A DNA stretch of 64,000 nt from Vicugna vicugna (Eukaryota): contig MU063499.1 in assembly GCA_013265495.1 (NCBI GenBank), forward strand, positions 1,116,001-1,180,000, written 5' to 3'. Below are positions 33,901-64,000 of the stretch, piece after piece; position 1 is the first letter of the stretch; every line of letters begins with the position of its first letter. The notes under the pieces are model-generated. The model searched no databases. It saw only the letters and a program-made list of their open reading frames with translations, and was not told the DNA's origin. The position numbers and the translations under genes are program-made.

Positions 33901-36358
33901 CCATAGTTCCTACTGACTCTCTCCTGTCTAATGAGGGAGGATGTGGGGGTTGGGTGCTCTCTAGTCTCAGGGGTGGCACACAATCCAGTGCTGCCTCCAG
34001 AAAGTTCAGCCTTCAATACGCAGGCAGAGCCAAGAGCCAACTGGCCCCTTCCAGGCACCTGGAGTTCCAATCTTTGAGCCCCTGAAGGAAAATCCACTAG
34101 GGGCCCTGCTTCCCTGTGGGTGGAGGAGGGGAAATGCAGGGAAGGCCCCAGAGTAAAGGGTTGCTATGGTGATGGAAGTTTTTAAAAAGGGGAGGGGAGG
34201 GGAGAGACGTTGTTTAAACCCTTTCTCCAAGAATTCCCTGAGACTTTGGCCTGATTCCTTCCCCATGGGTTCTGTGACCCTGGTCCCTATGAAGAAAGGG
34301 GCAGTGGGGAGCTGCGAGACTTTAGAAAAGAGAGAGGGGGCAGGGACACAGAGAGACAAAGGCAGAACCTGCAATGGAAGGGGAGCAAAGAGGCGACAGA
34401 GTAAAAAGGACACAGGCACAAGGACACAGGAGGGAAGGGGGGCAGGGGGGTTGAAGGGGCCCATGGGTGCCCAGCAGGGCCCTAAGGCCTCCATGACCAT
34501 GTGCTCTGAACACCTGGGCCAGGAGCTGCCCCTGGTGCCTGGACCTTTGAGAAGGAACCCTCCTGTATCCCCCTAGACATGCACTGAACGTGGTGTGGGA
34601 CAGCAGTAGCCCTGGGGAAGAGGCCAGCTGTTGCAGTCCCCTCAGTTGGAACAGTTCCTCAGCCCCTCTCCCTGTCATCACGGCAGCTTAAGTAAGGCAG
34701 GTCCACCATGTCGAAGGCACAGGCATGGGGGATGGAAATGAAGCTTGGAGACCTAGCTGTTTCACTTTACAGCCCCTCCTCTCAGCTGACCCAGCTATGC
34801 CTAGACTCCCTAGCCACCCCCAACCCGATCCCGCTGTCCTCTAGAGGCCTTGGGTCCCCAGGGCCTCTCTTGCAGCTCAGCCTAATTCCCTGTCACTGCC
34901 ATCCCCCTCCCCGACAATGGATTCTGTCTGAGGGCCAGAAACAGCACCCTGAGCAACCTAGAAATAGGATAACAACTACACAGCATTCCCCCTCCCACTC
35001 GGCCTCAGTTTCCCTGGATGGAGATCACTGACTCTGTGGCCTTCTCCCAGGGCAAGGACTGCCCACCTGCTAGTGAGTGGTGGCCAGCACAAGGGCTGCC
35101 GAGAAGGGCCAGTAGCTGATACAGGAAAGGCAGCCTATGGCACCTGAGGGCCCACACCAAATGCTGTAAAAGGGAAAGGAGCCTCTACTCCACCCCAGGG
35201 CCAGCCTGACACTGAGGGGAGTGGAGACATCAATTCCCCACTTGAGGAAACTGGGGCCCAGCAGGTGCCCAAAGCTGATAGGACTCAGTTGTGGGTGAGG
35301 GCACCAGGTCACCACAGGCGGTCCTTTGGGGGCTCAAAGCCTGGGCCTTGGAGGAGGGTCAGAACAGGGGCTGGACTGCTGCAGACTGAGGTTTTGGTGA
35401 GGGACAGAGAGCCCAGCTCCCTACGAGGGAACCTGGTGGAGCAAGCTCTGCCTAGGGGGTGCGGACAAAAGCAGTTTGGTAGAGCTATGGGGGACTGGGA
35501 GAGCCTAGGGTCTCTGCCAGACACCACAGGCTGGGGAAGGCAGAAACTCAGTGGCTCATTGTTCACCCAGCCAGCCAGGGGCCCTGCTCCCCATCGTGCT
35601 GCCACCCTGACCCCCTTCCCCAGTGCTGCTGACTCGCCCCCGCTGGCACAGCAACACACATGCGGAAGGCACACGTGTGAGCACCAAGCCCGCACCTCCC
35701 AGCAGAAACATGTGCGCCCCCCACCCCCACTGCGCAGCTCTGGGTGGGTGCCCTGGACACCCGGCGGGCCCCCGTGTTAAGGCTCGGAAGCTGGATCTTG
35801 GCTTGGGGGCTGCTGGTCCTCAGGGGCTTGAGCCTGCTCCCCCACCCCGCAGCAGCCCCGCCCAGCCCCCTTCAGGTTGTCGCCCATAAAGAACTCTCCG
35901 TTGTCATGGAAATTAGTGACTGCTTCGCGGGAGGGAGGGGGCAGGGGGCAGTTGGGAGGGGCAGGAGGCGGCTCTGGGAGTCAGGAGGGGCAGCTGAGCC
36001 CTCGGCCCCTACCGCCAAGGGGCACCACGAATGTTGGAGGGTTAATGTTTTCACAATTAGGAGCCCAGCGAGACGGGGGGTAGGATGGGGAACAAGCAGG
36101 GGAGACTGGCCTAGACTTGAGTCTTAGAGGTTTCCCCTGGGACCCCTGAGCCGTCCGAGGTGACGGGGAACTTTAGCCCAACCCCGCAAGCCGAACCCCG
36201 GATCTGCAGAGCCCGCGTGCTCTGCCCCCGCCGGGACCCCAAGCCCTCGCAGCACCCCCGCGCACTTGGCTACCCGAACCTCGAGCCAAAGACCCAATCC
36301 CCTAAGACCCCACAATATGCGTTCGGGGGGCGCCCCCTCTTCCTGGCTCACCCCTCAC

Positions 36359-38124: not shown

Positions 38125-38300
38125 GTGCACACTCCATGTGCCTGTGGGTGAAAGCACGTGGCAGGGTGTATGTGCACACGTGTGAGTACATCTGTGTGTG
38201 TGTGTGTGCTCTTATGCCATGGGAGATGGCAAGAGCACAGTGTGTGTGGTGGTGCCTAGGGGCACGTGTGTTTGCATTCTGTGTGCACCCAGGCATGCCT
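38125..38300. repeat. Degenerate (TG)-rich low-complexity tract
   Basis: Repeated GTGTG/GCAC motifs with a (TG)7-like core near 38194-38208. Confidence 0.6.
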
Positions 38301-39513
38301 GCTCGCGTAGGCACATAGACGCTGTAGCTAGTCCCTAGAGCCATGGGTCCCCTTCCTGCCTGACACAGGCCTCAGGATTGTGGAGGCTGACTCAGGGTGT
38401 GACAGCAGGACATAGGAAGAGGGTGGACCATGCCCAAGGGTGGACAGGCGCTGGGGTGACCCTATATCATTGGCTATTTCTAGGGCAGCCCCTCACTCTC
38501 AGATGTGTGTGGGTGTAGCCGGGTCTTTGCCCTTTGTGGCAAGGGCAACCTAAAAACAAGAACCCAGGGTTGGGACAGGGGTATGGCTTGTCCCTCAGCT
38601 CCCAGCCAGAGGGGCACAGGCCAGGTAGGGTTTCAGTGTTTTGGCTTCAACCTGCAGCTGCCCTCCAGGCAGGAAGTAGCAACACCAGCTGAATGCCTTC
38701 TCTCAGCTCTTCCAGGCCAGGGACTGGGCTGACACAGAGCTTTATTACTCACTGTACTCTTTAGAGCCAGACAAGTTCAGGGGCCATGATTTCTAGCCAC
38801 CTGCATGGCCAGAAGGAGGGCGGGAGGTCCTTCAGCACAGGGTGGAGTTGAGGACAGGAGCAGGGGCAGTTGGCATTGGCACTGGCATTGCCCCATAGTC
38901 TCTATGAGGGTCTCCTGAGGAGGCCTGCACCCCAGCCTCCTTGTGGGCAGGGGCTGCATGGGTTGGGAGGCTGAAGAGGAGAAGGGAGCCCAAAGTGAAC
39001 AGTTCCAGCTCCCAATGGAGCTAGATAGAGACAAGATTAGGTGTGAGCCTCCATACCTAGAGACTACAAAGCAGGCCAGAGCCTCCTCCCCCAGCTCAGG
39101 TTGTACCTCCCACCCAAGTTCCAGGATTTACCTGCACCACTACCTGGATTTCCTGTCCCAGGACACCAGAAGCCAGCACTCCTATACCTTCAAATTCTGA
39201 CTGGCTGCTAGAGCCCCTGCCAACCCAGCATGGAGCTCCAACCAAGCTTCAGAATTTAGGTGGTAACTGCATTACCAGGCCAGCTCCCCAAGAAGTCCAG
39301 ACTCAGACAGGTATCCTCCCTTGGGGGCAACAAATGCTCCCAGCCATCTGTGGAACCCTTTGGCTGTTGTCAAGTTTCCTGGCCTCAGCCCCTTATAGAG
39401 GGCCCAAGGTGGGGGAAGGCAAGCAGTCTTTTCTTCTGGAGCTAGGGGAGGGGGCTGTTCCCCCCACTTCATGACTCACTCCAGGCTGTGTGGGTTATTA
39501 CATTATGTTTGAA

Positions 39514-39527
39514 ATTGCCATGGCAAC
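39514..39527. promoter_or_regulatory. RFX X-box (13/14 palindrome) 3' of ACTL11
   Basis: ATTGCCATGGCAAC; a second site GTCACC-AG-GGCAAC at 39556-39569. Confidence 0.65.
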
Positions 39528-39849
39528 CAGCTGGCAATCAAGGGTAATTGAGCTTGTCACCAGGGCAACAGGGCAAAACCCACAGCAGCCACTCTCTGTA
39601 GTTGCCCTTGGGGTGCAGTAAAGGTCAGGTTAGACCAGGGCCAGTGCCAGGCAAGGGGCTCTGGGGCTCTGGAAGGGATAGGCTTGCCAAGGCCCCTGGA
39701 ATTCCAGTGTGTGGAAGCAGGGGGTGCCTTGAGAGTGCCAAGCCCTCCATCTCTGACCCCATGCCTGGACTCCTGCCCTTCCCTCCACCACCCTCTGCCT
39801 AAAATGTGCCACAGTGGTCAAAGTAAGCAGAACCAGAACTTTTATGTGC

Positions 39850-42800
39850 TCACAGATGGTACTTGTAGATGGCCCAAGGGCCCTCCTCCTCGTACTCATG
39901 GCGGCTGAGCCACAGGCTCTGGAAGGAGTCTCGGGACACCATGATGGAGCCTCCGAGCCAAGCAGCAACAGCACGGTGCGGAGAGCCCAGTACAGTGGCA
40001 CAAGGGCCCAGTTCCTGTCTCAGGCGTTCAGGAAAGCCATTCAACAGGGTGCTACCACCATCCAGCACCACATTAGCCAGCAGCTGCTCCTGCTGCTTGG
40101 CCTCCAGACGGCTGATACTTAGGAGGGCTAGTTGTGGGAGGCCTGGCTGATTGAAGCCTAGCAGATTGGGCTGGAAGAGGGCCTCGGGGCAGCAGAAGCG
40201 CTCAGAGCCCAGCGTGATGACCTGCTTGTCTGGAAGCACAAAGTCCACCCGGGCCTGGGCCTGGGCACGGGCCATCTCGGCTGTCATGTCCATGGCCACA
40301 TAGCAGCAAGCCTCTTTAATCTGGTTGACCAGCTCTGCCTTGGGCGGTGAGTGGCCACTTGCCAACAACAGCTGAGCCAGGTATTCAGTGAGGTCAGCAC
40401 CAGCCACATCCAGCCGGTAGGTGTCCAGTGGGGCCAGATCCCCGGTGATGATGGGCGCCACATAGGAAGTGCCATGGCCACTGCCCAGCACCAGCCCAGT
40501 GGTGCGCCCATAAGCATAGAGCGCCAGCAGGGCCTGATGCACCGTCTGCATAGCTGGCACATGGAAACGCTCAAAGAGTATTTCAGCTACCTTTTCTCGG
40601 TTGGTGCGCGGTGAGATGGGTGAGTCAGCTACCAGCACCGCCAGCTCCTCGGGCCGCACACCCAGCCTGCAGTAGAACAGGTGCTGCCACAGCACCTCCA
40701 GCGCATCCCAGTCGGAGACCACTCCTCGATTCAGCACTGAGTAAGAGCCCTCTCGTTTCTCAGGCACTGCATACCTGGGCTGGCCCTGAACCGGGTGCTG
40801 GAGCAGCTGTACGCGTGAGGGCACTACACTCAGGACATGGTCTTCTCCAGCCAGTCCACACTTGGTGAAGCCTGTGCCTGTGTCGATCACCACAGCTGCC
40901 ATGTCCTGGTAGGGGCCCAGAGTGTGGCGGCAGAGCACTGGGGACTGCACTGGCAGGGTGTTCATGGTGGGCACCAGCTCATAGCAGGCCCCTCGGAGCA
41001 GACCAAGGTGTGCGACCACTGGTGAGTGTGTAATGTCCTCAGCTGTCAGCTTGAACCGGGGACCTTGGAGCTCAGGGCCCACCATGGCCATGGGCAAGAC
41101 CTTGCAACCAGTGCCAGATGTGGTGAATGGGATCAGGGACAGCTGCGCCTCTTGGGCCCTGGGAGAGCAGCCAGGTTGCCAGGATGAGAGCTGATGTGTG
41201 CTGGAGCTTTGAGTAGCACTGGCACCAACTTTTTCTCTGTTCACAGAGACACAGGTCTCCTCAGGGGGCAGGGGCACCCGAACCACCCCCACGTGGGTAC
41301 GTTGGCCCAAGGGCTCATGTTCCTGGCACAAGGTGGAGGCCTGACCAGGTTCCCTAGTGGCAGGGGGCCCTCGTGAGAGGGTAGGCACAGTGGAGATGGG
41401 AGGCACTTGGGAAAAGGGAGGCTGCAAAGTGAGAGAAAGCTGCCTGCCATTAGGTGTCCCAGGAAGAGGGGGCTGACCAAGAAGGCAAGTCTGCTTGGTG
41501 GAGGGGGCCTGCTCAGCTACGGGTGGCTGTCCCGAAAGGTAGGTCTGCCTGGTGTGGGGACAGTGCTCTGCAGAAGGAGGCTGACTGGTTGAAGGGGGCT
41601 GTCTGGCGAGGGTACACTTCTCGGCTAGTGGGGGCTGACCACCGAGGGGACCCTGCCCAGCATCTTGGACCTGAGGGTGGTCAGGATGAGGAGTAATGAC
41701 CTCTTTCTGACCGTTGCTGCCTACATCCTTCTGGAGCTGGGGTCTGGGCACATCCTGGGTTTTGGCTGGTGGTACATGCTCTGGGCTCTGCTCTGAGTTC
41801 ATCCACTGCAATTTCTTGGCCTGGACCATAGAGGTATTCTGCATCCTGGAGGCATCCAGCATCCAGATGGTGCGACTAGCTTCATTTTTTTCAGCATCAG
41901 GTTTGGACCAGCCAGGACCATGGGCATGGCTAAGTGTCCTCTCTCCAAATTGGAGGGGCATCCCCAGTGGAATGGGCCCAGTGAGCATCCCCATCCTGAT
42001 GGGTGTCTCAGTACCAGGGGAGTCCACTGACTCCAGGTTGACCCTGGCCTCCTTGGGAACCAGGGCCACCTCTCGGTAGCTTCCAGATGAAAGGCTAGAG
42101 GGCACAGGGCTGGACACCATGGGCGTGGTAGACCAGAGGCTGGAGCGATTGCTGTCAGGGGAGAGAATGGGCATGGCTAATGGCCGGGTAGACAGCGTAT
42201 TTTCAGAGGCACGGATGGATGAGTGGCTGGGCATGAGGCCCACCAGCACTGCGCGTGAGCCCATGGGGTCGTGGCACAGTAGCCCCATCCTGGTATTGCC
42301 TGTGGCCATATCAAACACCAGCACACGGTCTTCTACAGCATCCTGGAGCTGACAGGTAGGGGCACTGGAGAGGGGTATCTGCATGGCTTCCCTGGGAGTC
42401 TCTGCCGGGGACTGCTTGTGGTAGTTTACTTGGTGGGCAGACAGGGGCACATTGGAGCAGGTGTTGTCGCAAACATTGAAGGGCTGCTGATCTGGCTGAG
42501 AGCTGCAGATCTCCTGGCTACCCCTCTGGGACTTGGGGGTCCCTGGGGGCCCTGAGCCTGGTTTTGGGCTGCTTGGCCTGGAGGTACAGACCAGGGGCTT
42601 CTCCAGTTGGTTTTCAGGCTTCTTGGGTAACACAAGCCTTCTGGCAACCTCGAGCTCCTGGGCCTGGTCTGGGGACTGATTTGGAGTGGGTGCTGGGGTG
42701 GGAGGCTCATCCTGAGAATGGAAATTCACTTTGTCCTGGCAGGATGTGACCCCTTTGGAAGACTCCGAGTAGATTGACCATTGATTGCCATGATTCCTGG

Positions 42801-43602
42801 GAAAGAGGTCTTGGGACAGGCCCTTGGTGATGGCATTAGTATTAGTCAGGGGGTCGAGGTTGCAGGTGTAAGTTTCAACTGCTACTGATATTGGGGTTGT
42901 ATCCAGAGCTGGAATATTTGCCTGAGTTGAAGCTGGAGGAGCCTGAGTTGGACATGGACACTTGTCCTGGTCCTGATCTTGCACTGGGGCCAGAAGAGGA
43001 ACTTGGGCTGCAGCTGAGCCATCCTCCCCTGGAAGAAAACAGGGTAGCCACCGGCTCTTTCTAATGCCCATTGGGGCTATCTGATCAGGGCTGCAGGGGC
43101 CTCTGCCCCAGCCTACTAGAACTTTAGCTGGAGCCTTGCCCTCCCCCGAAATCTGCACCTGAAGCCGGGAGCAGCAGAGTCCGTGCTGGGCCATGTCACT
43201 GGTACCGTCACTGCGCGTGCACACAGGTAAGGCCAGGGTCCTGTTCTCCATGTTGAGATGTGTTTGGGCTCCCACGACGGGGCTTGGAAACGGGCTAGTG
43301 GAGGAGAGGGTCAGGGCATCCTGGGAGGCCTGCTCACAGCCACATTGGGAGCTAACCTGAGCAGGGTCCTGGAGTTGCTGGTGAGTGGGCTTGAGGGTGT
43401 GGGTCTGGGAGCCTGGGCCATAGGCCCCATCAGTGATGGCCTTGGTGGACAGTGACAAGCCCTGCCTCAAGTATACAGATCCTGAGTTTATCCAGGGTCC
43501 CTGGGACCCTCTAAGGCCACCCCCCAGCTGCTGGCTACCAGCCAAGGGGTGGCCCTGGGGGCCTGATGGATCAGGGTCCCCCACTTTCTTGTTGACTTCC
43601 AT
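39850..43602 (-). CDS. ACTL11: Actin-like protein 11: intronless 1250-aa ORF, 900-aa low-complexity N-terminus plus C-terminal actin-related domain
   Basis: Uninterrupted 3753-nt ORF; ATG in strong Kozak context (ACTATGG) with an in-frame TGA 39 nt upstream. Residues 901-1250 (39850-40902) align to actin: VVIDTGTGFTKCG, GVVSDWD, NREKVAEILFE, YAYGRTTG, RLDVAGADLT, ERFCCPEALFQP, GGSTLLNG, WLGGSI. Sits between CAMKV and MST1R, where ACTL11/ACTL11P lies in mouse/human. Confidence 0.92.
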   Translation of the reverse strand: MEVNKKVGDPDPSGPQGHPLAGSQQLGGGLRGSQGPWINSGSVYLRQGLSLSTKAITDGAYGPGSQTHTLKPTHQQLQDPAQVSSQCGCEQASQDALTLSSTSPFPSPVVGAQTHLNMENRTLALPVCTRSDGTSDMAQHGLCCSRLQVQISGEGKAPAKVLVGWGRGPCSPDQIAPMGIRKSRWLPCFLPGEDGSAAAQVPLLAPVQDQDQDKCPCPTQAPPASTQANIPALDTTPISVAVETYTCNLDPLTNTNAITKGLSQDLFPRNHGNQWSIYSESSKGVTSCQDKVNFHSQDEPPTPAPTPNQSPDQAQELEVARRLVLPKKPENQLEKPLVCTSRPSSPKPGSGPPGTPKSQRGSQEICSSQPDQQPFNVCDNTCSNVPLSAHQVNYHKQSPAETPREAMQIPLSSAPTCQLQDAVEDRVLVFDMATGNTRMGLLCHDPMGSRAVLVGLMPSHSSIRASENTLSTRPLAMPILSPDSNRSSLWSTTPMVSSPVPSSLSSGSYREVALVPKEARVNLESVDSPGTETPIRMGMLTGPIPLGMPLQFGERTLSHAHGPGWSKPDAEKNEASRTIWMLDASRMQNTSMVQAKKLQWMNSEQSPEHVPPAKTQDVPRPQLQKDVGSNGQKEVITPHPDHPQVQDAGQGPLGGQPPLAEKCTLARQPPSTSQPPSAEHCPHTRQTYLSGQPPVAEQAPSTKQTCLLGQPPLPGTPNGRQLSLTLQPPFSQVPPISTVPTLSRGPPATREPGQASTLCQEHEPLGQRTHVGVVRVPLPPEETCVSVNREKVGASATQSSSTHQLSSWQPGCSPRAQEAQLSLIPFTTSGTGCKVLPMAMVGPELQGPRFKLTAEDITHSPVVAHLGLLRGACYELVPTMNTLPVQSPVLCRHTLGPYQDMAAVVIDTGTGFTKCGLAGEDHVLSVVPSRVQLLQHPVQGQPRYAVPEKREGSYSVLNRGVVSDWDALEVLWQHLFYCRLGVRPEELAVLVADSPISPRTNREKVAEILFERFHVPAMQTVHQALLALYAYGRTTGLVLGSGHGTSYVAPIITGDLAPLDTYRLDVAGADLTEYLAQLLLASGHSPPKAELVNQIKEACCYVAMDMTAEMARAQAQARVDFVLPDKQVITLGSERFCCPEALFQPNLLGFNQPGLPQLALLSISRLEAKQQEQLLANVVLDGGSTLLNGFPERLRQELGPCATVLGSPHRAVAAWLGGSIMVSRDSFQSLWLSRHEYEEEGPWAIYKYHL

Positions 43603-43640
43603 AGTCCTGCTCCATGCCCTAGGTGCCCTGCCCCCACTTC

Positions 43641-43654
43641 ATTGCCATGGCAAC
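43641..43654. promoter_or_regulatory. RFX X-box in the ACTL11 proximal promoter
   Basis: ATTGCCATGGCAAC, 39 bp upstream of the ACTL11 ATG. Confidence 0.7.
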
Positions 43655-45679
43655 TCCACACATCACAGCCCCCAGTGACCTGGGGGAGGGTGATAGAGTG
43701 TGGGAAACCAGGGGCCCCACCCCCCTGAGGAGTGGGGGCCTGCCCATGGAACCCTGGGGGACAGAAAGGCCAAGGGATGCCAGTGGCCATCCACTGGACT
43801 GGCCAACTCTGGACTGGCCTCCTCTCTCCTTGCCAGCCAGGTGACCACTCGGCCCAGGCCAGCCCTTGCGTGAGGGCAGTGCTCCTGGAGGTGGGAGTGT
43901 GTATAAGGCCAAGGGAGAAAGGTAGGCAGAGGAGATGCTGAGGAAGCCCCTGCATTCCCAGTCTACCTCAGATGCCAGACTTACTCTTTCTGCCCAGTTC
44001 CCAAGTGGCAACTTGAGACTTAAACCCTGACCCAGGGATGCAGTTCCAAGTGTGTGACATGAGGCCCTTTGGGGGTCCAAAGCTCCTTCACCACTCAGTC
44101 CTAAGAGGCAGAAGTGGGTGAGGGGCCCAGGCTCAGGCCCAAACTCCCCTCCCCCATGTTCCCCGGCTCCCACTCCAGGGACAGCAGCTCCTTGGCAGTC
44201 TTTCTGCTCCAGATGGTTCTCCTCTGCCTGTGCCTCCCAGAGCCCCCTCCCCAGAGCCACATGTCCTTGAGGCCCAGGACCAGTATCTCACAGGGGTGGG
44301 GATGGGCACAACTTGGACGGGGGTGGGGCCTCTGCTCAGAATCCTCAAGTCAGAATGTTCTAGCCTTTGTCACATTGTGTCAATTTCACCTTGGCCAGAA
44401 GGAGGCTAGAACACTGGGCATAGGCCTAGGCCACAGTGGACACTGGGCCAGTCAAGTCACAATTACAGGATGGGGCATAGTGGGGATACAGTGGTTACAG
44501 GGCCATTCTCACAGTGGGCAGAGGGCTCGCTACACAATGGGGGTATGGTGGGTGTGGGACTGGACACACAGTGGGCACAGCTGCATACATAGGGAGGACA
44601 AGCTGGACAAAGGAATAAACTTGGAGAGGCATACAGGAAAGGAAGCTGTCAGACCAGGTGGGCAGTTCCACCCTCCATTTCTTAGATGGGCAAACTGTGG
44701 GTCAGGGAGGAGTAGGACCTGCCTGGCCCACCATCCCAGGCCCAGATGTGCCCTGCAGCCACAGAGGACAGGCCTAGTTTGGGGTACCACCTATTTCCAC
44801 AGGCCTGGCTCTGGAGTTCTGCCTGGGGCAGGGTCAGACCCTCCACCCTCCCTCAGCTATGAGCTCTGGGTCTCCTCCCTCTGTTGTCCAGGGCTGGCCT
44901 CTCAGGCCTCAGTCTTTCCACCTAGGAAACAGGTCTGTGGAGAATGCAGCTGTAGGCTTGTCTTCTGAAGCAGTGTGTTTTCACAGGAGTTAAAAATAGT
45001 GCTTACAGTTGGGCTGTGGGGTGTGAAGCGATGTGACCAGGGACCAAGGCTAGCACTGAGCTCTATCTGCACATTCCTGACTCGGGATTGGGCACAGCCT
45101 GACTCAGTCATGTCTCAGGCCCCCCGGGACCCCTCTCCCTTCCCCAGATGCTGCCTTCAGTTCCAAATGAGGACAGATGCCTCTGCTTACCACACACCCA
45201 GGAAGGTGGCAGAACCCCAGGGTCTGTGGCTTGCACGTGTGTGCATACGCACACATACTTGCTGAGCACTGTTAACTTCGTTAATCTCTTGCCTGGAGCA
45301 AACTGTTTTTTTATATTTTGTTTTGTTTTTCCCCACAAGAGAGATACTAGTAGCAGCCTCTGATGCTCTTGCAGCCCTTCAGCTGGGCTGCACCTGGGAG
45401 GGCTGGGGAGGCATGGAGGGAGGACCTGAAAGCTCCTGCCTGTCTGACCACTGAGCCATCCCCAACATCCTGCGGAAATGAGGCGTAATCATCCTTTCCA
45501 GGGCTGGAGTCCTTGTGAACTACTGACCTGAGAAGGGTGTGGCCTGTGAAGGAGGGACCAAAGAAGGCAGTCTGGAGAGAGGAGAAGGCTCTTCCTACCT
45601 GGAAAGCAAACACCCTTGAGAGCAACAAGAAGAGTGACAACTACTGACTGGGTCCTTCCCTGGGCCAGGCAGCGCTGAG

Positions 45680-45840
45680 CATTGTAACCCAGCTTCACAG
45701 CAGTTCAGTGAGCCGGAGACAATCATCCTTATTTTACAAACGAGGAAATCAAGGTACAGAGGGGAGAGAACTCACAGGGGTCGCAGCTAATGAGTTGTCG
45801 AGCCAGAATCCAAAGCCAGGCCACCAGGCTCTAGATACCA
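45680..45840 (+). mobile_element. MIR SINE
   Basis: ATCATCCTTATTTTACAAACGAGGAAATCAAGGTACAGAG core. Confidence 0.7.
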
Positions 45841-46352
45841 CACTTCAGGAACCTATGGTGCCACCACTGGGTGCCTGCCCAGGGCCATGTAGGCACGGAC
45901 CCTCCTGGAGGGGAGCCAACATGCCTTGCTTCTGAGTGCTGCCTCCCCAAACTCCAACCCACATGGACCTGCTCCTCTTCCCAACAGCTTAGCAGGTGGG
46001 CATTTTTAGGAGGGGAGCATTTTTTCCTTTTCGTGCCACTAAATCAGTGCCCTCCCAGGAACCTGGCGGTGCTGAGTAGGGGCTAGTTACATACCTGGGG
46101 GACCAAGCTGAGTCCTTTGTAGTCAGAATTCTTGGCTGGCTGAAGCCCCTTCCGTTTCATCCAGCCGAGGGGAGGGGCAGCAGGGCAGTTTAGAGAGGCT
46201 CCCAAGCTGGGCCTCTTCTGCCCAGCCCCCTGGGATCAGGCAGGGACATTGCCCCTGTACCCCTCCCCCCAACATGTTTTTAAATAGTCTCTCACCAGGA
46301 AGAAGGGCATCCAATTCTATTTCTGATTCTGGAAAGTGAGGAGGGCCAACAT

Positions 46353-46366
46353 GTTACCATGGAAAC
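46353..46366. promoter_or_regulatory. RFX X-box (perfect GTTNCCATGGNAAC)
   Basis: GTTACCATGGAAAC, 2.75 kb upstream of the ACTL11 ATG. Confidence 0.65.
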
Positions 46367-49300
46367 CTGGAGAGCCCCTCCCCCAGGCTGAGCCCATTCC
46401 CCAGGCTGAGAGCTGTCTGGGATGAAGGGGCCCAGAAGCAACAGGAAGGAGTTCAGTCTGAGGGCAAGGCCAGGCAGAGGCTCCTCTGTGAGGGCAGATT
46501 CCAGCATTGCCTCCCTTCACACTTCACCTGACCCCTTCCAGGCAGGCCTAGAGAGAGGGGGAAGGCCCCTGTGGAGAGGGTCAGACTTCAGGAGATGGGG
46601 TGAGTCACCTCACTCTGAGAAACCCTCCTTCCCTGTGGATCAGGCTGGAATCCTCCCACCAAGGAGGCCTGGAGGATGGTGGGTAGGAAGGGCATCAAGA
46701 GGAGAGGCATAGGAGCTCCATTCTACCCAGAGCTCCGTGACCAGCCGAGTCTTCCAGACCTGCTTCTCCCACACAGACGTATTTTTGGCTCTGTTGTGTT
46801 CTCAGGAGTCAGCTCTGTCAAGTCCCTGGCCCTGCACTCTTCCAGTCTACCTGCCTTCCCCTCCTGGGACTCTGGGAAGACTCTAAACATCTCCAAAAAC
46901 CTAGGATCAAAAGGAGGCTGAGAGGGCTCCCAGTGCAGCCAACCACTTGATAATGGAGTGAAAATCAATGCCTGTTTCCCCAGACATTCATCCCTGCCCA
47001 CTGTCCAGGGGCTCACACACCAGCCCTTCTATCCCAGAGGCTGTACATGGGTAGCATTTAGATCTGTGGAGGGAGGGCACCCCAGATAGGGGAACAGCCC
47101 AGGCAAAGGCAGGCTTTTGAAGAGACCCAGAAGGACATTGTGATCAACCCTCTCTAGGTACTGATGGGAAACCAAAGCCCCCGAGGACAAAGGCTGCACT
47201 CTTGGTCTCTCAGCTCTATACACAGCACTCTGCGTTTTCCTCTCCTCCCTGTGAACCCTAACTTCCTGCTTCCCTGGCAGTCTCTCCTGGTCAGTGTACC
47301 CATTCCTTGGAGGCAACACCATGTTTGAAGGAGCTGGCACACCTTCTCTCTGCCCACCCACCTGGCCCCAAAGGAACGCAGTCACGGTGCAGGGAACCCC
47401 AGTCCTAGAGGAAGCTATGGCAAGATGAGGGGTGATAATCCACTCCTCGTCTGGGATGTGAAAGGCAAAACCCAAGAGTGCAGGAGGACGTGGCTCTTGA
47501 GCTCTAAGGCACGGAGAAATTCAAATAACAACTGTTTAAACAACCTTCCCTGCAAGCCATGGTGCAGTGACCCCTCTGCTGTGATGTGTTACAGCTTAAA
47601 AATAGCCCACAATGAACCGCTCTGAGCTCCAATTGACTCAAGCTTACGTAACTCTGAGTGAAAGATGGCCAGCCGCACCAGCCAGGAGGGAGGACCACAG
47701 CACAGCCACCCTGACAGCTGTCCACAGCTGGCTTAGGGACTGGAGCGAGCGCCTTACCCTCCCTGGGAGTAGGAACCAGCAAAGGATGAGGGGAAGGAAT
47801 TGCTGTCAGAACATGCAGGAATTCATGACTGCCAAGAAGAGACCTCCGAGCACACCTGCAAAGGGGGTGTGAGGAGAGCTGCCCTCCCTCAGGGTCCCTG
47901 AGGAACCCAGGCTCAGTGGAGGATGGGGGTGACTAAGAACTGCTGGCTGGGTTAGAGAGACCAGGGTGGGCACTCACGAGGGCAGAGTGACTGGGGCCAC
48001 CCAAGGAATTCCTTTTCCTTTGGAGAGGGGGCTCCCCAGAAACATGTCAGCAGGACCGATGCCAGGTCATCATCTTTAGACCTGAAGAACCCAGGCCACC
48101 CAGGAGGCCACCATAGCCAGAGATGAATGTGGTAGCTGTCCAGGCTCTCTTGGCCTCTAGGCTTGTTGGGTTAAAAATCTCGACTTGAATAAGCCTCAAA
48201 AGAATGAAGGGAGAGACTGAGGCTCAGCTGGCCCCTCTGTGCCAGATGGGAAATGTTGGGGGTGGTTCAGCAAGTCATCCCACCTCCTGGCTGGTTGGAC
48301 TCTCACATGGGCAAAGCATAGGCTTGGGGTGAAGAGATGCTCAGTTCCTGAGGTCTTCAAGGAGAAATTTTCCAGCCCAGCATGAGTAAAAGGAGCCTGG
48401 CAGATCCCAGACCAGGGCTCAGCTTCTGATTCCCAGGGCTGCTTCTCTCCAGGCTGAGGCAGTAAGTGCAAGAGATGTGTCCTGGGCCTTCCAAAGCCTC
48501 AGAAACTTGCAGCTGCCCCCATGTCCCCTGACCCTGCCTGGCACTGAGGGGTCCTGCTCTCTCCTAGAAGTGAGGGGAGTCAGTTCCTGAAATGGCAGCA
48601 GAGGTGGACCCGGGACCTCATGGGCTGCACCAAGGGAGTGACTGATGAAGCTGCTATTTCAGGAAGGTCTCAGAGTTGAAATGAGGCTATGCCTGGAGCC
48701 CTCAGGTGTGACTCCCAGAGCGCCTTGGGGTCTCTGAGGAAACTCTCTGAAAGGCTAAGGCTTTGGCATAAGGGGAATCTCAGACCAGACTCATGGGCCC
48801 CCGTCAAAGCAGGTGGGTCTACCCTGTGCATGCCCTCCAGGTGCCAGACAACATGACACCAATGGGCAGTCAGGAGGGTGTGAGTCATCTGCTGCCACCT
48901 CAGCCCCGGCTCCCATCCTGGCCTTCCTCCAGCCTTTACTGGCAACTGCTTGCCCCCCAGCCTCTCTGAAATTGAGGCAGAGGAGCTGATACTTGCTGTC
49001 TACAACTCATGATGGGAAGACTGGACTCCCAGAGCCCTAGAGAAAAACCCGTCCTCACCCCATCCCACCCTCATGGCAGGCCTAGGCCCACCATGTCCAC
49101 CAACAACTTTCCTCTTGCTCCAGCCACTACTCAGTACCCCCCCCAGGAGAAAGGCAGCCCAGCCTTCACTAGCCCTGGAAGCCATTCAGAAAACTCCTGG
49201 TCCCCCCAGCCCATCTGGGGGCCTAGATATAACCCTCCCTTCCTCTCCTCCCTGGTGGCCCGGTCAGGAATCTGAAGCCCTGAAGCAGTTCCAGCTCCTA

Positions 49301-50593
49301 ACACTCCAGATGGACTCAGGACTATCAAGTGGCTTTGAGAACAGTTAGGTGCTTGGGGGCTGCAGCATTATGGGGAGGAGATGCAGCTGTGCCAAGCCCC
49401 TGCTTAACTGTGTCCTCTCCTGGGCCTGGAGACCCTTGGCCCAGAAACAGGCCCAAAGTCCCACATTCTGGCTGCACAGGAAACCTGATACCCCTTGAGC
49501 GTCTTCCATCTTCCTTCTCCCAGACTCCTCTCCTTTCTAAGCTTCCCTCCCATCCAGAGACCCCCTTCTTCTCTGAGCCCCTCTCTTACGAACAGGTAAG
49601 CTAGAGGTCCATAAGCTGCAGAGGCTCAGTGGAGAAGGAACCTCAGACCAGCTTCAGAGAAGCCTCTGAACCTTCTCCTCACTCCCCACCCAGGGCTTGG
49701 GGCTTGGATGACCCTTAGATGCCCAGGATGAGGTTAGGGCACGAGGACTGCACCTTGGAAGGCTGGAGACGGTCCTTTCCAACAAGTATGGGGACCACAG
49801 CTCTGGAATACTCCAGCACTGTGGGAGTACAGTCCAGTCTCCTCTCTCCCAGCCTCAGGGGTGACATGATAGGTGGGAGCCCAGGGGTCTCTGGAAGAGC
49901 ATGTAGGGCTACCATCTCCTCTGTGCCTGCACTCATGGGCATTAGAGGTGCAGTCAAACAGGTAGAGACTGAGTCAGCCTCTACCCTTCACCAGCTCATA
50001 GGGCCCTGACCTTCAGACCCCTGCGCTTGAGCGGAGAAGTCTTTTACCTACCTGTCCTCAGGGTCCTTAGGCTCCCCATAGCTGGGCCTCCCTGTGGCCT
50101 GAGGTGAGAGTATGGGTAGAAAACAGCTGGCCAGCTCCAGCCCCAAGGAGACCCAGGGTTCCACAGATGACAGGGCAAAGAGCTGCGGACCCAAAGGAGA
50201 GGCAGTCTACTCCCCTTTGGGTGTGGTGGGGTCTCCCAGCTGGTGGGATAGAGGCCATGGGGATCTGGAGCAAGAGAGAGGAACCACCAGGGTGCATGTG
50301 TTGGGCCCAGTCACCCTGATACCCCAGCTATCTACACCAGCAGGGCCCAGATGCCCCCTCAGCATTGGGGGCGTGGGGGAGGGGTGGGACCAGAAGGAAG
50401 TTGTTCTCCTTCTCCAGTGGAGTCTGCCCCTCCAGTGGGTGTTGTACAGTGGCCTTGATGCGTATAAACAGCCTGAGCAGTCTGCACCTCGACGCTGGTG
50501 AGCCAGCCTTGCTACTGGCTCATCTCTCTCAAGGTTGCAAGAGCAATGTGGTCAGGGATGGGGTGGAGGGAAGCAAGTCTCCACACCTTGACA

Positions 50594-50680
50594 GTGTGCG
50601 CGTGAGTGTGTGTGTGCGCGTGTGTGCGTGCATGTGTGCACGTGTGAGTGTGTGTGCACGTGTGTGTGTGTGTGTGTGTG
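50594..50680. repeat. Compound (TG/CG)n alternating purine-pyrimidine microsatellite
   Basis: 87 bp of nearly unbroken RY alternation ending in a pure (TG) run. Confidence 0.9.
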
Positions 50681-50899
50681 GTAGGAGGGGGTGTTGGGGG
50701 AAGATAGCAGGTAGAGCAGGGAGCCCTGGAGAGGAACTGGGGCCTGGAAAATGGGACAGGCAGACTGGGCAGTGGGAGAAGCCACCCTGACTGCTACATG
50801 TCTGGGTACTCAACCTACCCCTCCTGGTTCCATCCAAAAGTCCCCAGGGCCCTAGATCTGGGCCTTGCCTACCCTTCCTGTTCTCTGGAGCCTTCTTGC

Positions 50900-51235
50900 T
50901 GACTCAAACCCTTTCCAGCCTCAGGGTCTTTTCATGCGCTGTTCACTCTGCCCAAAACTCTCTTCCCTCAACTGCTTCTGGCACAGTTCCCACTGACAAA
51001 GTCTCAGAAAAAAATGTCACCTCCTGGGGTGGCTTCCCACACCTTTCTATTCATCTCGATATCTAAAGCTGCCCTCCATTCCCTCAAAACAGCCTGTCTG
51101 TTTCTTTCACAGCATTTATCACAATTTGAACTTGAATACTCATTTATTCATTTACTGATTCAAGGGCCAGTGGTCACCATCGAGTCCCCTGTGCCCAGCA
51201 GCCAGGCACACAGCAGACATTCCATAAATACTGCA
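50900..51235 (+). mobile_element. L2 3' end overlapping the MST1R 3' UTR end (antisense to the gene)
   Basis: CCAGCCTCAGGGTCTTTTCATGCGCTGTTCACTCTGCC...CCCCTGTGCCCAGCAGCCAGGCACACAGCAGACATTCCATAAATACT resembles the L2 terminus. Confidence 0.6.
51143..51148 (-). terminator. MST1R polyadenylation signal
   Basis: AATAAA on the minus strand about 260 nt after the stop; variant AGTAAA at 51151-51156. Confidence 0.7.
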
Positions 51236-51409
51236 TCAAGGATCCCCTCACTGGTTCCCTCTGTGGAGTGAGAGGCCATTGTGCCTTGCACCTTCCTATG
51301 CCCCTGAAGGCTGAGAGGCAGGGACCGGCAGAGGCCAGCCCAGAGGCAGCTTGGGTTAACTCCCACCATTACACAGGTCCGATCCCTCGGGTCCTGCCTG
51401 GGGCTGAGG

Positions 51410-54400
51410 TCACGTGGGCCTTGGTGGCTCTGAGAGGGGCCGGGGCCGCCCTGTGCTCCTGTGCACTGGTGGGGACGGCGACTGTTCCGATGACAGGTTT
51501 GCCTTGTCAGAGGTGCCAGGGCCCACGTTCACATAGGCCACGGGCAGCTGCACGTAGTGGTCTCCTCGCAGTGTGGCCACCATGCGCTCCACTTCCCCTG
51601 CCAGCACTCCAAAGGTGGGTCTTGCTGCAGGATCTGCAGCCCAGCAGTGCTGCATCACTGCATACCTACCAAGTGGAGGAAAACGTCAGAGGCATGGTGC
51701 ACTGCACCCAGAGACTCCGGGCCATCTGCCTGCTGTTACCACCCGGCAGGCCACACAGGGGTGAGGGCAGGTGACAGGACCTGGTGCCTCACATCGCCCA
51801 ATTAGGGGCAGCTCTTCTCCTTCCCAACTTGGCAAGGTTGAATTGCATCAGGGAGCTAAGAGGTTGGGCTCCTGTGCCCTGTGACCTGGGCTATGTGATC
51901 TTGAGCAAGTTCCTTAACTCTGTGCCTCTGGATCCTTCTCTGATCACAGAGGTATTGGGGCATAAGGTGAGAGGATGCCTGTGCAGTTCTTAGCTTAGGG
52001 CCCAACTCACAAGCTATCATGGTTATCATCACATATCTTCCAGGAAGGAAGCCCAGATCTGGGGATTAAAAGGCCTGAGATGTGTGGGGCAGCACATGGC
52101 ACAATGGTTCCCAAGCAAGTGTCTCTGGGTTTGTCGGGTGAGTTCTAATACATCCGCCTTTATCTTGGAAATATTATCCCTGCCTTAAATGATACTAAAA
52201 TTGCCCTACACACAATAATCTCATATACTTTTTAGACCCTCTGAAGGTGGGACTGTTATCATTCCAACTTTCCAGATGAGAAAAACTGAGGCCCAGAGAG
52301 AAGGGACTTGCCCTGAAATAGAGGATGCTGTGGTGTGCCACCCAGATACCCCCCTTTATTCTGCCTGTGGCTGCTGATGGCTCTTGGCTGAGGCCCTGAC
52401 TAGGAATTGCCCTAGGCAGAAAAGAAATGCCTCCTACAAGTTCACACTCCTTCCTCAGGGACAGCTGTGACCAGTGACTGACTAATGTCTGGTGCAAACA
52501 GCTGGGCCCCTTGATCTCAATTTCAGAAAACTCCGAAGGGCCTTTCCAGTGTCAGAGGTTTCCAGGGCATAGGCTGTAGCTTCTGTTGCATCTGCATCAC
52601 AGGCCAACTTCTTCCCCTGCCTAGTCCTGCTTCTCTCACCCCCAGTCTACCAATAAACCCTCTGCACGTAAATCTCCATCTCAGAGTCTGTTTAGGGAGA
52701 CTGCAATATAGGCAAATAGACAGTGAAGTTAATTTCCTTTACTTTGTTTTTTGTTTGGTTTTGTTTTGCAGGGGGAGGGAATTAGGTTTATTTATTTATT
52801 TTAAGTGGACGTACTAGAAATTGAACCCAGGACCTCGTGCATGCTAAACACACACTCTACCACTGAGATATACCCTCCCCCTAATTTCCCTTACTTTGAA
52901 TCAGACGCATTAGTGATGTAAATAATAAAGAGCAAACCCAAGGCAGGCAGGGCAGTGAGGAAGGATTACTCATACCCTTCTGGAACACAGATTGGATAGG
53001 ACTCATCAACCACCTTTACCTGTGTTCTTCCTGTTCTGACCAGAGACTTCAGCACAGCTGAGCCATGTGTGCTGCTTATGAAGCTGAACCTGGGCACCAA
53101 AACCACCCATCAGGCACTGATGAAACACAGCGGCCGTCATACCTCTGGGAACAGGCAATCTAAAACTATACCCAGTGGAAAAAAAAATCTGATCTGCTGA
53201 TGGGGGGGAGGGGCTAGTGTGGGAGCTAATGGAACATTTCCTTGAGGTTAAGAAAGAGGAAAAGATGGAAAACAGCCCCCCTTGGTGGGGGTGGGTGGAG
53301 AGGAGTGCTGGGAAATCAAATCACTGGCCTCAATCCAGACTGAGTTAGGAAATGCTGTTACCATGGCAACTGTGATATTCTTCCAGCACCCAGCCCGGAA
53401 TAGGGGTGGAACCAATCCGCAGATGAGGAAACTGAGGCCCAGAGAGGGTCCCTTTCCAGGTCAGCCAGAGAATCAGTCAAAGAATCAGGCAAGGACTCTG
53501 TCTCCAGCCCCTTTCTTGTCTCTGGGGCCTAGCTCACTCCCCATCACCACTTCCACATACTCACAGAGAATCGGGGCAATACTCAGGCTGGGGCAGGCGG
53601 CGACCCTGGGCCAGGAAGTGAGCGAGGTCAAAAGGGTCAATGTGGGAGTATGGTGGGGCACCCCGTGTCAGCAGCTCCCATAACAGCACACCAAATGACC
53701 ACTGTGGGAGGAGAGAGGTGAAGGGACTGAACTCTTACCCCAAATTTGGAGACAGGTGGGTCCCCCCAGCTCCTCTACCTCTCAGAGCCCTCTAGCTGGA
53801 ATGGAGGGGCTTGACCCCCCAATCAGAGCCCATTCCTCAAAACCTCACCAGCGTCTTCCCTCTGTCCCCACCCACCACTCGAGCCTGCCCAGAGTTGGTG
53901 TTGGGCAGGGCCCAGATTGTCTGGAGTTCATAGCCTTCTCTTGCCCTGACATCTGCCCAGAGGTGGGCAAATGGGCTGGGGGTGCTGCCCAGCTAGGGAA
54001 TTCCCTGGACTCAGATCATCGTCCGGAGCTAATGGGCAAGTCCAGGCTGAGTGTCCTCCCAGGACGCTGAAGCAATGTGGGCCCTGGGGCAGGTGGGGCC
54101 TTACCACATCAGACTTGGTGGTGAATCTGTAAGTCTGTAGGCTCTCGAGAGCCATCCATTTGACAGGTAGACGAGCGTGGCGGTGCTGTTGGACACTGTA
54201 GTATTCCTTGTCCAGGACGTCGCGGGCCAGACCAAAATCAGCCACTTTGACCGTGAATGACTCATCCAGCCTGGAAAGGGAATCACTCTCAGGACTGGCC
54301 CCTACCAGGCCCTGAACCCACCTGTCCCGGCCCGAACAGGGTTTCTGAGCCACAATGTCCAATCCAAGCCTGCACAGGGTAGACAGGAAAACAGACCCAG

Positions 54401-63718: not shown

Positions 63719-64000
63719 CGAGGCCCAGAAGGAGCCCCGCGAGGTTCCTGCAGGCCCGGGCCCGGCTGGGAGCCGACTAGAATCCTGTGTTGGGACCAGT
63801 GGGGAGTGCCGGTCCTGAGAGCCCTCCGGCAGCTGACCCCGCCAGGGCTTCTGAGATGCCCACCGCTCGCCCCCGCCCTTGGGTCTGAGCACCTGACGCG
63901 GGCAGACACACTCACCGACAGGGAACAGAAAAGCTGCCTCACCTGCTGCTCCAGCTGCCGCTCCCAGCTGGCGCTTGGAGCAAAGTCTGTCGGAGCGCCC
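62650..64000. promoter_or_regulatory. MST1R 5' CpG island (exon 1 / 5' UTR / proximal promoter)
   Basis: High CpG and GC density across MST1R exon 1 and its 5' flank. Confidence 0.65.

What the first reader, a model, noticed from the sequence alone, without database searches (positions are those of the whole stretch)
39514..53370. Dense RFX X-box array bracketing ACTL11 and reaching into MST1R
Seen: the identical 14-mer ATTGCCATGGCAAC lies both 39 bp upstream of the ACTL11 ATG (43641) and about 320 bp past its stop (39514). Perfect GTTNCCATGGNAAC sites occur at 46353 and 53357, a variant GTCACC-AG-GGCAAC at 39556, and GTTGCTATGGTGAT at 34160 just outside the span. Under uniform base composition the perfect 12-fixed-base pattern is expected about 0.004 times per 64 kb; two are present, plus two one-mismatch copies. 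Established: RFX2/RFX3 bind X-boxes and drive spermiogenesis and ciliogenesis, and MSP-RON signalling raises ciliary beat frequency in airway epithelium. Inference: an undescribed RFX module driving ACTL11 in round spermatids and possibly MST1R in ciliated cells.
Basis: partly seen in the sequence, partly recalled or inferred. Interest (0 to 1): 0.72.

Follow-up and report, generated by a model that had tools for sequence, protein, structure and literature searches.

The report
Conserved RFX X-box sites around ACTL11
Six binding-site motifs for RFX transcription factors around the sperm actin-like gene ACTL11 are real and conserved across placental mammals, but only the one at the ACTL11 promoter fits the proposed testis role; two others lie in ancient enhancers that already work in human neural progenitors.

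Summary

Comparison with 11 mammalian orthologous loci shows each site is kept at its orthologous position. The substitutions concentrate on the two degenerate positions of the RFX consensus. These are therefore selected RFX sites, not chance and not repeats.

- **ACTL11 promoter site (-52 from the ATG):** it lies in a roughly 150-bp invariant proximal promoter. Mouse Actl11 falls 4.4-fold in Rfx2-null testis at P30 with an RFX2-like expression profile, but it was not called a P21 ChIP promoter target.
- **3' site pair (39514 and 39556) and upstream site (46353):** they sit in composite conserved non-coding elements. The 3' element is conserved to marsupials. Published luciferase primers for human "CAMKV" and, less securely, "MST1R" regulatory elements map onto them. 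These elements were studied in RFX3/RFX4-dependent interneuron progenitors.
- **Human ACTL11 is reported as a pseudogene (ACTL11P):** so these elements do not need ACTL11.
- **MST1R/cilia idea:** nothing supports it. That site lies in MST1R's last intron.

The finding is a new instance of known RFX regulation, and part of it has already been studied. No RNA evidence could be obtained.

The parts
34160..34173 (-). X-box-like site (ATCACCATAGCAAC on the gene strand), probably in CAMKV intron 1
   Evidence: for the sequence. It is a sharp phylogenetic footprint in 10 of 10 placentals and a perfect consensus in Eulemur. It ranks at the 96th conservation percentile.
38914..40319 (.). Orthologue of the human 'CAMKV' regulatory-element amplicon tested by luciferase assay in neural progenitors
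   Evidence: Both primers from PMC11140214 map convergently: 17 of 20 bases each in the window, 18 of 20 each in Eulemur. The interval contains the 3' conserved element.
39410..39650 (.). 3' conserved non-coding element, about 240 bp and 91% mean identity across 9 placental species
   Evidence: It is 84% identical over 132 bp to the marsupial Antechinus. It lies upstream of the first AATAAA (stop+1104), so it is probably inside the ACTL11 3'UTR, and about 3 kb upstream of the presumed CAMKV CpG-island promoter.
39514..39527 (-). X-box A (GTTGCCATGGCAAT on the gene strand)
   Evidence: Retained in 11 of 11 placentals, with changes only at motif position 11. 98.5th conservation percentile.
39556..39569 (+). 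X-box B (GTCACCAGGGCAAC), a perfect classical consensus
   Evidence: Conserved in all placentals and a perfect consensus in Antechinus.
39472..39478 (.). AP-1 heptamer TGACTCA inside the 3' element. CAGCTG lies at 39528-39533 and TAATTG at 39545-39550.
   Evidence: The AP-1 site is present in placentals and, slightly shifted, in Antechinus.
39850..43602 (-). ACTL11 coding sequence: 1250 aa, intronless, actin domain at residues 900-1246
43603..43751 (-). Near-invariant proximal promoter and 5' leader of ACTL11
   Evidence: Alignment of 11 species; conserved block 43467-43751.
43641..43654 (-). Promoter X-box (GTTGCCATGGCAAT), starting 52 nt upstream of the ATG
   Evidence: Identical in 6 species including elephant. 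Mouse and lemur carry the consensus-compatible variant GTCACC....
45190..46710 (.). Approximate orthologue of the human 'MST1R' regulatory-element amplicon. This mapping is tentative.
   Evidence: The forward primer matches 18 of 20 bases in Eulemur. The reverse primer matches only 14 of 20, at a collinear position also seen in horse. The spacing matches that in the window.
46241..46424 (.). Upstream conserved non-coding element, 90% mean identity across 9 placental species
   Evidence: It contains a TATA-like TATTTAAA and a GTGAGA donor-like motif on the gene strand.
46353..46366 (-). X-box (GTTTCCATGGTAAC on the gene strand), 2.76 kb upstream of the ACTL11 ATG
   Evidence: An orthologous X-box is present in 11 of 11 placentals.
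53357..53370 (-). Perfect X-box (GTTGCCATGGTAAC) in the last intron of MST1R
   Evidence: The flanking kinase exons are at about 53564-53734 and 51413-51685. The site is conserved in camel, armadillo and elephant; the other fetched loci do not reach it.

Best explanation
The interval holds six genuine RFX-type X-boxes: 34160, 39514, 39556, 43641, 46353 and 53357. Each is an independent site that has been under purifying selection since the placental ancestor. They do not form one module.

(1) The box 52 nt upstream of the ACTL11 start codon is part of an almost invariant 150-bp core promoter. It is most likely bound by RFX2, as a homodimer or heterodimer, in round spermatids to activate this sperm-protein gene. 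This is the usual arrangement for RFX2 targets, whose X-boxes sit at the transcription start.

(2) The pair of boxes just past the ACTL11 stop and the box 2.8 kb upstream sit in composite, deeply conserved enhancers that also carry AP-1, E-box and homeobox motifs. These most likely work in neural cells through RFX3/RFX4 (possibly RFX1/RFX7). Their probable target is the neuron-specific neighbour CAMKV, whose presumed promoter lies about 3 kb beyond the 3' element. The sites in CAMKV intron 1 and in the last MST1R intron are probably further distal RFX enhancer sites of the same landscape.

What is shown: presence, excess over chance, orthologous conservation, a substitution pattern that fits the RFX consensus, and correspondence of the 3' element (and, less securely, the upstream element) to published human reporter fragments.

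What is inferred: which RFX paralogue binds, in which tissue, and which gene each distal site serves.
For: Excess over chance.

Orthologous conservation. The sites rank at the 85th to 98.5th percentile of non-coding 14-mers.

Substitution pattern: pooled over 61 orthologous sites, 16 of 38 non-majority letters fall on the two N positions (4 and 11), while positions 2, 6 and 7 never vary. Binomial P is 3e-5. This ignores relatedness among the species.

Independence of the sites: no paralogy between them.

Promoter role: the X-box lies in an invariant leader. ACTL11 protein is abundant and phosphorylated in boar sperm (PMC8322956). Mouse Actl11 is down 4.4-fold at P30 in Rfx2-/- testis with an RFX2-like profile (PMC4498915). 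RFX2 sites cluster at the TSS.

Neural role:
- The 'CAMKV' luciferase primers of PMC11140214 bracket the 3' element, and the 'MST1R' primers probably bracket the upstream element.
- That study cloned H3K27ac peaks. 23 of 29 were active in day-15 progenitors, and all 6 with an RFX site were enhancers.
- The 3' element is conserved to marsupials together with its AP-1 site.
- A neighbouring element at 47500-47706 carries MEF2, PAR-bZIP and AP-1 motifs.
- Human ACTL11 is reported as a pseudogene, ACTL11P, yet the regulatory element was picked from human chromatin data.
Against: - No occupancy data for any site in this species.
- Mouse Actl11 is marked 'no' for an RFX2 ChIP-seq promoter peak (-500..+50, P21 germ cells).
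- The P30 drop could be secondary to the spermatid arrest in that mutant.
- The ACTL11 transcription start is unknown. The one read-laying run failed, and the dog Logan contigs turned out to be genomic DNA.
- The paper's text does not say which six tested elements carry the RFX site, or what activity the CAMKV and MST1R fragments had.
- The 'MST1R' reverse primer maps only weakly (14 of 20).
- Assigning the distal sites to CAMKV rests on proximity and motif content alone.
Confidence: 0.5

Rival explanations
1. One reading: the whole array is one RFX2/RFX3 module that brackets and drives ACTL11 in round spermatids, with the distal boxes acting as testis enhancers.
For: Identical 14-mers flank the gene and both are ancestral in placentals. 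Actl11 is down in Rfx2-/- testis with an RFX2-like profile. Two thirds of RFX2 ChIP peaks are non-promoter, so distal testis sites are possible and would not have been assigned to Actl11.
Against: The distal elements are far more conserved than is typical for testis regulatory DNA; the 3' element is conserved to marsupials. They carry AP-1, E-box and homeobox motifs. Their human counterparts were selected from neural chromatin data. Human ACTL11 is reported as a pseudogene. There is no ChIP promoter call in mouse.
Confidence: 0.2
2. The 46353 and 53357 boxes regulate MST1R (RON) in multiciliated epithelium through RFX2/RFX3.
For: Only proximity. 53357 is intronic in MST1R and conserved in three placental superorders.
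Against: Both sites lie at or beyond the 3' end of MST1R, 10-17 kb from its start codon (about 63.7 kb). No X-box at up to 1 mismatch lies between 54 and 64 kb. Functional X-boxes far from the TSS are described as the exception (PMC5838959). MST1R was not found in the RFX target tables searched.
Confidence: 0.07
3. Conservation reflects RNA-level function, not RFX binding. The 3' element would be a 3'UTR control element of the ACTL11 mRNA. The promoter 'X-box' would be conserved because its CCATGG is a conserved upstream start codon in the 5' leader.
For: The first AATAAA is at stop+1104 and is shared by 6 of 11 species, which puts the element inside the likely 3'UTR. The 38 nt between the promoter box and the ATG are nearly invariant, and the box's ATG opens a short upstream ORF that is in frame with the main ORF in elephant. 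The RNA fold z-score is -1.95.
Against: There are no compensatory pair changes except one peripheral pair, and several pair-breaking changes. 8 of 200 shuffles fold as well. The substitution pattern follows the DNA palindrome's degenerate positions. The same element works as a DNA regulatory-element candidate in human cells where the gene is a pseudogene.
Confidence: 0.1
4. The motifs are chance occurrences, or relics of a repeat family, without function.
For: 53357 lies about 60 bp from a MIR fragment.
Against: 0 of 100 shuffles reach the observed count. Every site is retained at its orthologous position for roughly 100 million years. There is no sequence similarity between the sites beyond the motif.
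Confidence: 0.02

Closest known systems
RFX2-dependent spermatid promoters (X-box at the TSS; Kistler et al. 2015, PMC4498915)
   Same: A 14-bp palindromic X-box within about 50 bp of the start of a sperm-protein gene. The mouse orthologue is down in Rfx2-/- testis with an RFX2-like developmental profile.
   Different: Mouse Actl11 was not called a ChIP-seq promoter target at P21, and its drop is seen only at P30. The TSS is not mapped here. The mouse box is the weaker variant GTCACCATGGCAAT.
RFX-motif regulatory elements of human interneuron progenitors (PMC11140214), specifically the fragments labelled CAMKV and MST1R
   Same: The primer pairs map onto the 3' element (firmly) and the upstream element (tentatively), both of which carry strong X-boxes. 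The study reports that all six RFX-motif fragments were enhancers.
   Different: The text does not say whether these two fragments are among the six. The work is human and neural, and does not mention ACTL11, the individual X-boxes or their conservation.
X-box motifs in conserved non-coding elements of mammalian genomes (noted in PMC2797782, citing its reference 61)
   Same: X-boxes embedded in deeply conserved non-promoter sequence of unknown significance.
   Different: Here six such sites cluster within 20 kb and can be tied to specific neighbouring genes and to one reporter study.

Membership tests
RFX X-box binding site | 14-bp imperfect palindrome matching GTNRCC-NN-RGYAAC (full site) | tested here: met
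   Two sites are perfect for GTTNCCATGGNAAC, two have one mismatch, 39556 is perfect for the classical consensus, and 34160 has one mismatch.
RFX X-box binding site | Purifying selection that follows the motif: specified positions kept, degenerate positions free | tested here: met
   Positions 4 and 11 take 16 of 38 changes, and positions 2, 6 and 7 take none. P is 3e-5, which ignores phylogenetic non-independence.
RFX X-box binding site | Occupancy by an RFX protein in vivo | not testable with these tools
   No ChIP data are accessible. The only indirect datum is negative: mouse Actl11 has no promoter peak at P21.
Direct RFX2 target gene in spermatids | X-box within -500..+50 (or +/-500) of the TSS | tested here: inconclusive
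   The box is 52 nt upstream of the ATG in a conserved promoter, but the TSS is unmapped because the read-laying run failed.
Direct RFX2 target gene in spermatids | Expression depends on RFX2 | tested here: inconclusive
   The literature shows log2FC -2.15 at P30 in Rfx2-/-. This could be secondary to the spermatid arrest in that mutant.
Distal neural enhancer | Deep non-coding conservation with clustered motifs for several factors | tested here: met
Distal neural enhancer | Active chromatin and reporter activity in neural cells | tested here: inconclusive
   The human orthologous fragments were chosen from H3K27ac peaks and tested. Their individual results are only in a figure that is not held.

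The most novel reading that the evidence does not exclude
One ancient array of RFX sites is shared between two tissues. RFX2 would use the promoter box (and perhaps the flanking boxes) for ACTL11 in spermatids. RFX3/RFX4 would use the flanking elements, one of them embedded in the ACTL11 3'UTR, for CAMKV in neurons. The neural use would have kept the elements intact in humans after ACTL11 decayed to ACTL11P. These X-box enhancers could then underlie the strong 3p21.31 association signal for age at first birth that has been attributed to ACTL11P/MST1R.
Probability: 0.15. Interest if true: 0.65.

Novelty: new member of a known kind. Interest (0 to 1): 0.4.

Why it matters
- It gives ACTL11, a barely studied but abundant sperm protein, a concrete and testable promoter element.
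- It identifies the precise, deeply conserved RFX sites inside the regulatory fragment that a human study labelled CAMKV and, tentatively, the one it labelled MST1R.
- Human ACTL11 is reported as a pseudogene, and the ACTL11P/MST1R interval is cited as the top locus for age at first birth. Knowing that the conserved functional DNA there is a set of RFX-site enhancers probably serving CAMKV could redirect the interpretation of that signal.
- Otherwise this is an ordinary example of RFX-dependent cis-regulation.

Tried and rejected
RNA evidence:
No TSS, splice or 3'-end data could be obtained.
- Dog Logan contigs carrying the gene looked like possible transcripts (29 blocks of 5-10 kb). They are collinear genomic DNA that breaks at a SINE and a microsatellite.

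Sequence-based alternatives:
- A repeat or duplication origin of the sites is rejected, because nothing beyond the motif is shared.
- Rfam found no RNA family at the conserved elements, only a tRNA-like hit elsewhere.
- An RNA-structure reading of the 3' element has a weak z-score and no covariation.
- The element at 44111-44383 is treated as a coding exon in the elephant gene model, but 1-nt and 5-nt indels between species break any reading frame.
- The marsupial promoter could not be assessed. The called gene is N-terminally short and no X-box lies upstream.

Literature:
- Supplements of PMC7498320 and PMC11140214 are not held.
- PMC5838959 and PMC4745085 do not list ACTL11, CAMKV or MST1R.
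- A CAMKV-linked regulatory element in PMC13763844 appears, from my recollection of human gene coordinates, to lie outside this interval. I did not check this.
Full report
**1. The observation**

The 14-mer ATTGCCATGGCAAC occurs exactly twice in the window, at 39514 and 43641. That compares with 0.01 expected, and no shuffle reached two copies. GTTNCCATGGNAAC has perfect matches at 46353 and 53357. Allowing one mismatch adds the two copies above, giving 4 hits against 0.12 expected from dinucleotide-preserving shuffles, with 0 of 100 shuffles reaching 4. A scan with the classical consensus GTNRCCNNRGYAAC at up to one mismatch gives 20 strand-hits against 6.8 +/- 2.8 expected. It confirms the variant at 39556 (a perfect match) and the site at 34160. 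All strong sites lie between 34 and 53.4 kb.

**2. Gene context**

The ORF at 39850..43602 on the minus strand encodes 1250 aa with an actin domain at residues 900-1246. Its best relative is a Camelus ferus protein at 97% identity, and orthologues across placental mammals are named ACTL11. The window is therefore from a camelid.

ACTL11 protein is abundant and heavily phosphorylated in boar sperm (PMC8322956).

In every orthologous locus MST1R lies upstream of ACTL11 on the same strand, and the elephant locus shows a CAMKV-like kinase gene downstream. In the window:
- The last MST1R coding exon is near 51413-51685 and the one before it near 53564-53734.
- The MST1R first exon is at 62348-63892.

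So 46353 is intergenic, about 5 kb past the MST1R stop and 2.76 kb upstream of the ACTL11 ATG. 53357 lies in the last MST1R intron. 34160 lies between a CpG island at 36-37 kb, presumed to be the CAMKV promoter, and the first CAMKV coding exon near 29.3 kb.

**3. Conservation**

I fetched the ACTL11 locus with 10-kb flanks from Camelus, grey whale, cattle, horse, dog, lemur, hare, Mus caroli, armadillo, elephant and the marsupial Antechinus.

| Site | Conservation |
|---|---|
| 39514 (3' box A) | 11 of 11 placentals, about 300-330 nt past the stop, identical in 9 |
| 46353 (upstream box) | 11 of 11 placentals |
| 43641 (promoter box) | identical in 6 species including elephant, once the true elephant ATG is located; consensus-compatible variant GTCACCATGGCAAT in mouse and lemur; one or two changes in cattle, hare and armadillo |
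| 34160 | sharp footprint in 10 of 10 placentals |
| 53357 | perfect in camel, armadillo and elephant, the only loci whose flanks reach it |

Against all non-coding 14-mers of the interval, the sites rank at the 85th to 98.5th conservation percentile.

Pooled over 61 orthologous copies, 16 of 38 non-majority letters fall on motif positions 4 and 11. These are the two N positions of the consensus. Positions 2, 6 and 7 never vary. The binomial P is 3e-5, though it ignores relatedness among species. This is the pattern expected if RFX binding specificity is what selection preserves.

The sites share nothing beyond the motif, so they are not duplicates or members of a repeat family.

**4. Anatomy of the elements**

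*Promoter box.* It sits in a block (43603-43751) that is almost invariant in all 11 placentals, including 38 nt between the box and the ATG.

*3' boxes (39514 and 39556).* They lie in a 240-bp element of 91% mean identity. The element also carries a third RFX half-site, an AP-1 heptamer, a CAGCTG E-box and a homeobox-type TAATTG. It is 84% identical over 132 bp to Antechinus, where box B is a perfect consensus and an AP-1 site is also present.

*Upstream box.* It lies in a 184-bp element of 90% identity.

*Neighbouring element without an X-box (47500-47706).* It has 92% identity and carries a perfect MEF2 site, a TTACGTAA PAR-bZIP site and an AP-1 site.

Conservation this deep, combined with this motif company, is what one expects of neural or developmental enhancers rather than testis regulatory DNA. 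That last point is an inference from general knowledge.

**5. Literature: testis**

In Kistler et al. 2015 (PMC4498915), Table S1 lists mouse Actl11 as follows:
- ChIP-Seq: 'no'.
- P21: not differentially expressed.
- P30 in Rfx2-/- testis: 'down', with log2FC -2.15, P 1e-10 and base mean 4590.

Table S2 marks it as downregulated at P30 with an RFX2-like expression profile, but not as a ChIP target.

In that study, 'targets' are genes with a peak within -500..+50 of the annotated TSS in P21 germ cells, and two thirds of the roughly 3000 peaks were non-promoter. The negative call is therefore weak evidence: the gene is not yet differentially expressed at P21, and distal peaks were not assigned to genes. 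The positive expression result may in turn be secondary to the spermatid arrest in that mutant.

**6. Literature: neural**

A study of human cortical interneuron development (PMC11140214) cloned 29 H3K27ac-defined putative regulatory elements into a TK-luciferase vector. At day 15, 23 were active in neural progenitors. Six carried an RFX site, and all six enhanced expression. The study then showed that RFX3 and RFX4 are required in these cells. Two of the fragments are labelled CAMKV and MST1R.

*CAMKV primers.* They map convergently in the window at 38914 and 40300-40319, matching 17 of 20 bases each. In lemur each matches 18 of 20, and in hare the reverse primer matches 19 of 20. By my own estimate, about 0.004 such matches per primer would be expected by chance. 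The fragment equals the ACTL11 3' end plus the 3' X-box element.

*MST1R primers.* The forward primer matches 18 of 20 bases in lemur, 1.2 kb on the ACTL11 side of the upstream X-box. The reverse primer matches only 14 of 20, at 356 nt on the other side, with a collinear match in horse. That fragment probably spans the upstream element, but this mapping is tentative.

The text does not say which fragments are the six with RFX sites, and the supplements are not held.

A preprint names the human gene ACTL11P and cites the ACTL11P/MST1R interval as the strongest locus for age at first birth. No human protein appeared among the ACTL11 homologues. The distal elements are therefore in use in a species where ACTL11 is reported to be a pseudogene.

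**7. What could not be settled**

Sequence features leave two possibilities open:
- *An upstream start.* A conserved donor-like CTG|GTGAGA and a TATA-like motif lie in the upstream element. An acceptor-like CCCCCAG|G lies about 28 nt upstream of the promoter box. A transcript starting at the 46353 element and splicing in just before the promoter box is therefore conceivable.
- *A long 3'UTR.* The first AATAAA is 1104 nt past the stop and is shared at that position by 6 of 11 species. The 3' element would then lie inside the 3'UTR.

An RNA-level role for the 3' element gets little support. The fold z-score is -1.95, there is no real covariation, and several changes break pairs.

**8. Verdict**

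The X-boxes are real, non-random and selected RFX sites.

The flanking elements are better read as neural RFX enhancers, probably for CAMKV, and at least one has already been handled experimentally in human cells under the CAMKV label. The MST1R/cilia idea has no support. That site is in the last intron, and no X-box lies in the roughly 280 bp of MST1R upstream sequence that the window holds or elsewhere between 54 and 64 kb.

This is a new, well-conserved instance of a known regulatory logic. Interest is moderate, chiefly because it pinpoints the functional bases in a human association locus and gives ACTL11 a testable promoter element.

Noticed in passing
window 47500-47706: The most conserved intergenic element of the interval (92% mean identity across 9 placental species) has no X-box. 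It carries a perfect MEF2 site (47596-47605), a PAR-bZIP TTACGTAA (47644-47651) and an AP-1 heptamer (47634-47640). It is probably another enhancer of the same landscape.
   Followed up: partly
window 44111-44383: Conserved element 500-780 nt upstream of the ACTL11 ATG, with an ACAATG SOX-like motif. The elephant gene model translates it as a coding exon, but 1-nt and 5-nt indels between species break any frame, so it is non-coding.
   Followed up: partly
window 43603-43654: The CCATGG of the promoter X-box is an ATG in a strong context. It opens a 9-codon upstream ORF in most species and is in frame with the main ORF in elephant. The 38 nt between the box and the ATG are nearly invariant in 11 species.
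   Followed up: partly
window 52805-52877 (-): A tRNA-Ala(AGC)-like sequence in the last MST1R intron (Rfam 35.6 bits; ARAGORN). It could be a tRNA gene, a pseudogene or a tRNA-derived SINE head.
   Followed up: no
window 13220-13233 (-): Another perfect classical X-box (GTCACCATAGCAAC) well outside the finding's span. Its conservation was not examined.
   Followed up: no
window 52283-52300 and 53429-53446: Two copies of the MIR SINE core (AAACTGAGGCCCAGAGAG). The second is about 60 bp from the 53357 X-box, but the X-box itself does not look MIR-derived.
   Followed up: partly
P0101 (Bos): A UniProt cattle entry fuses CAMKV kinase domains with the ACTL11 actin domain. This suggests read-through or merged gene models between the two neighbours.
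   Followed up: no
window 38144-38208 and 50586-50678: GT-rich microsatellite-like tracts on either side of ACTL11.
   Followed up: no
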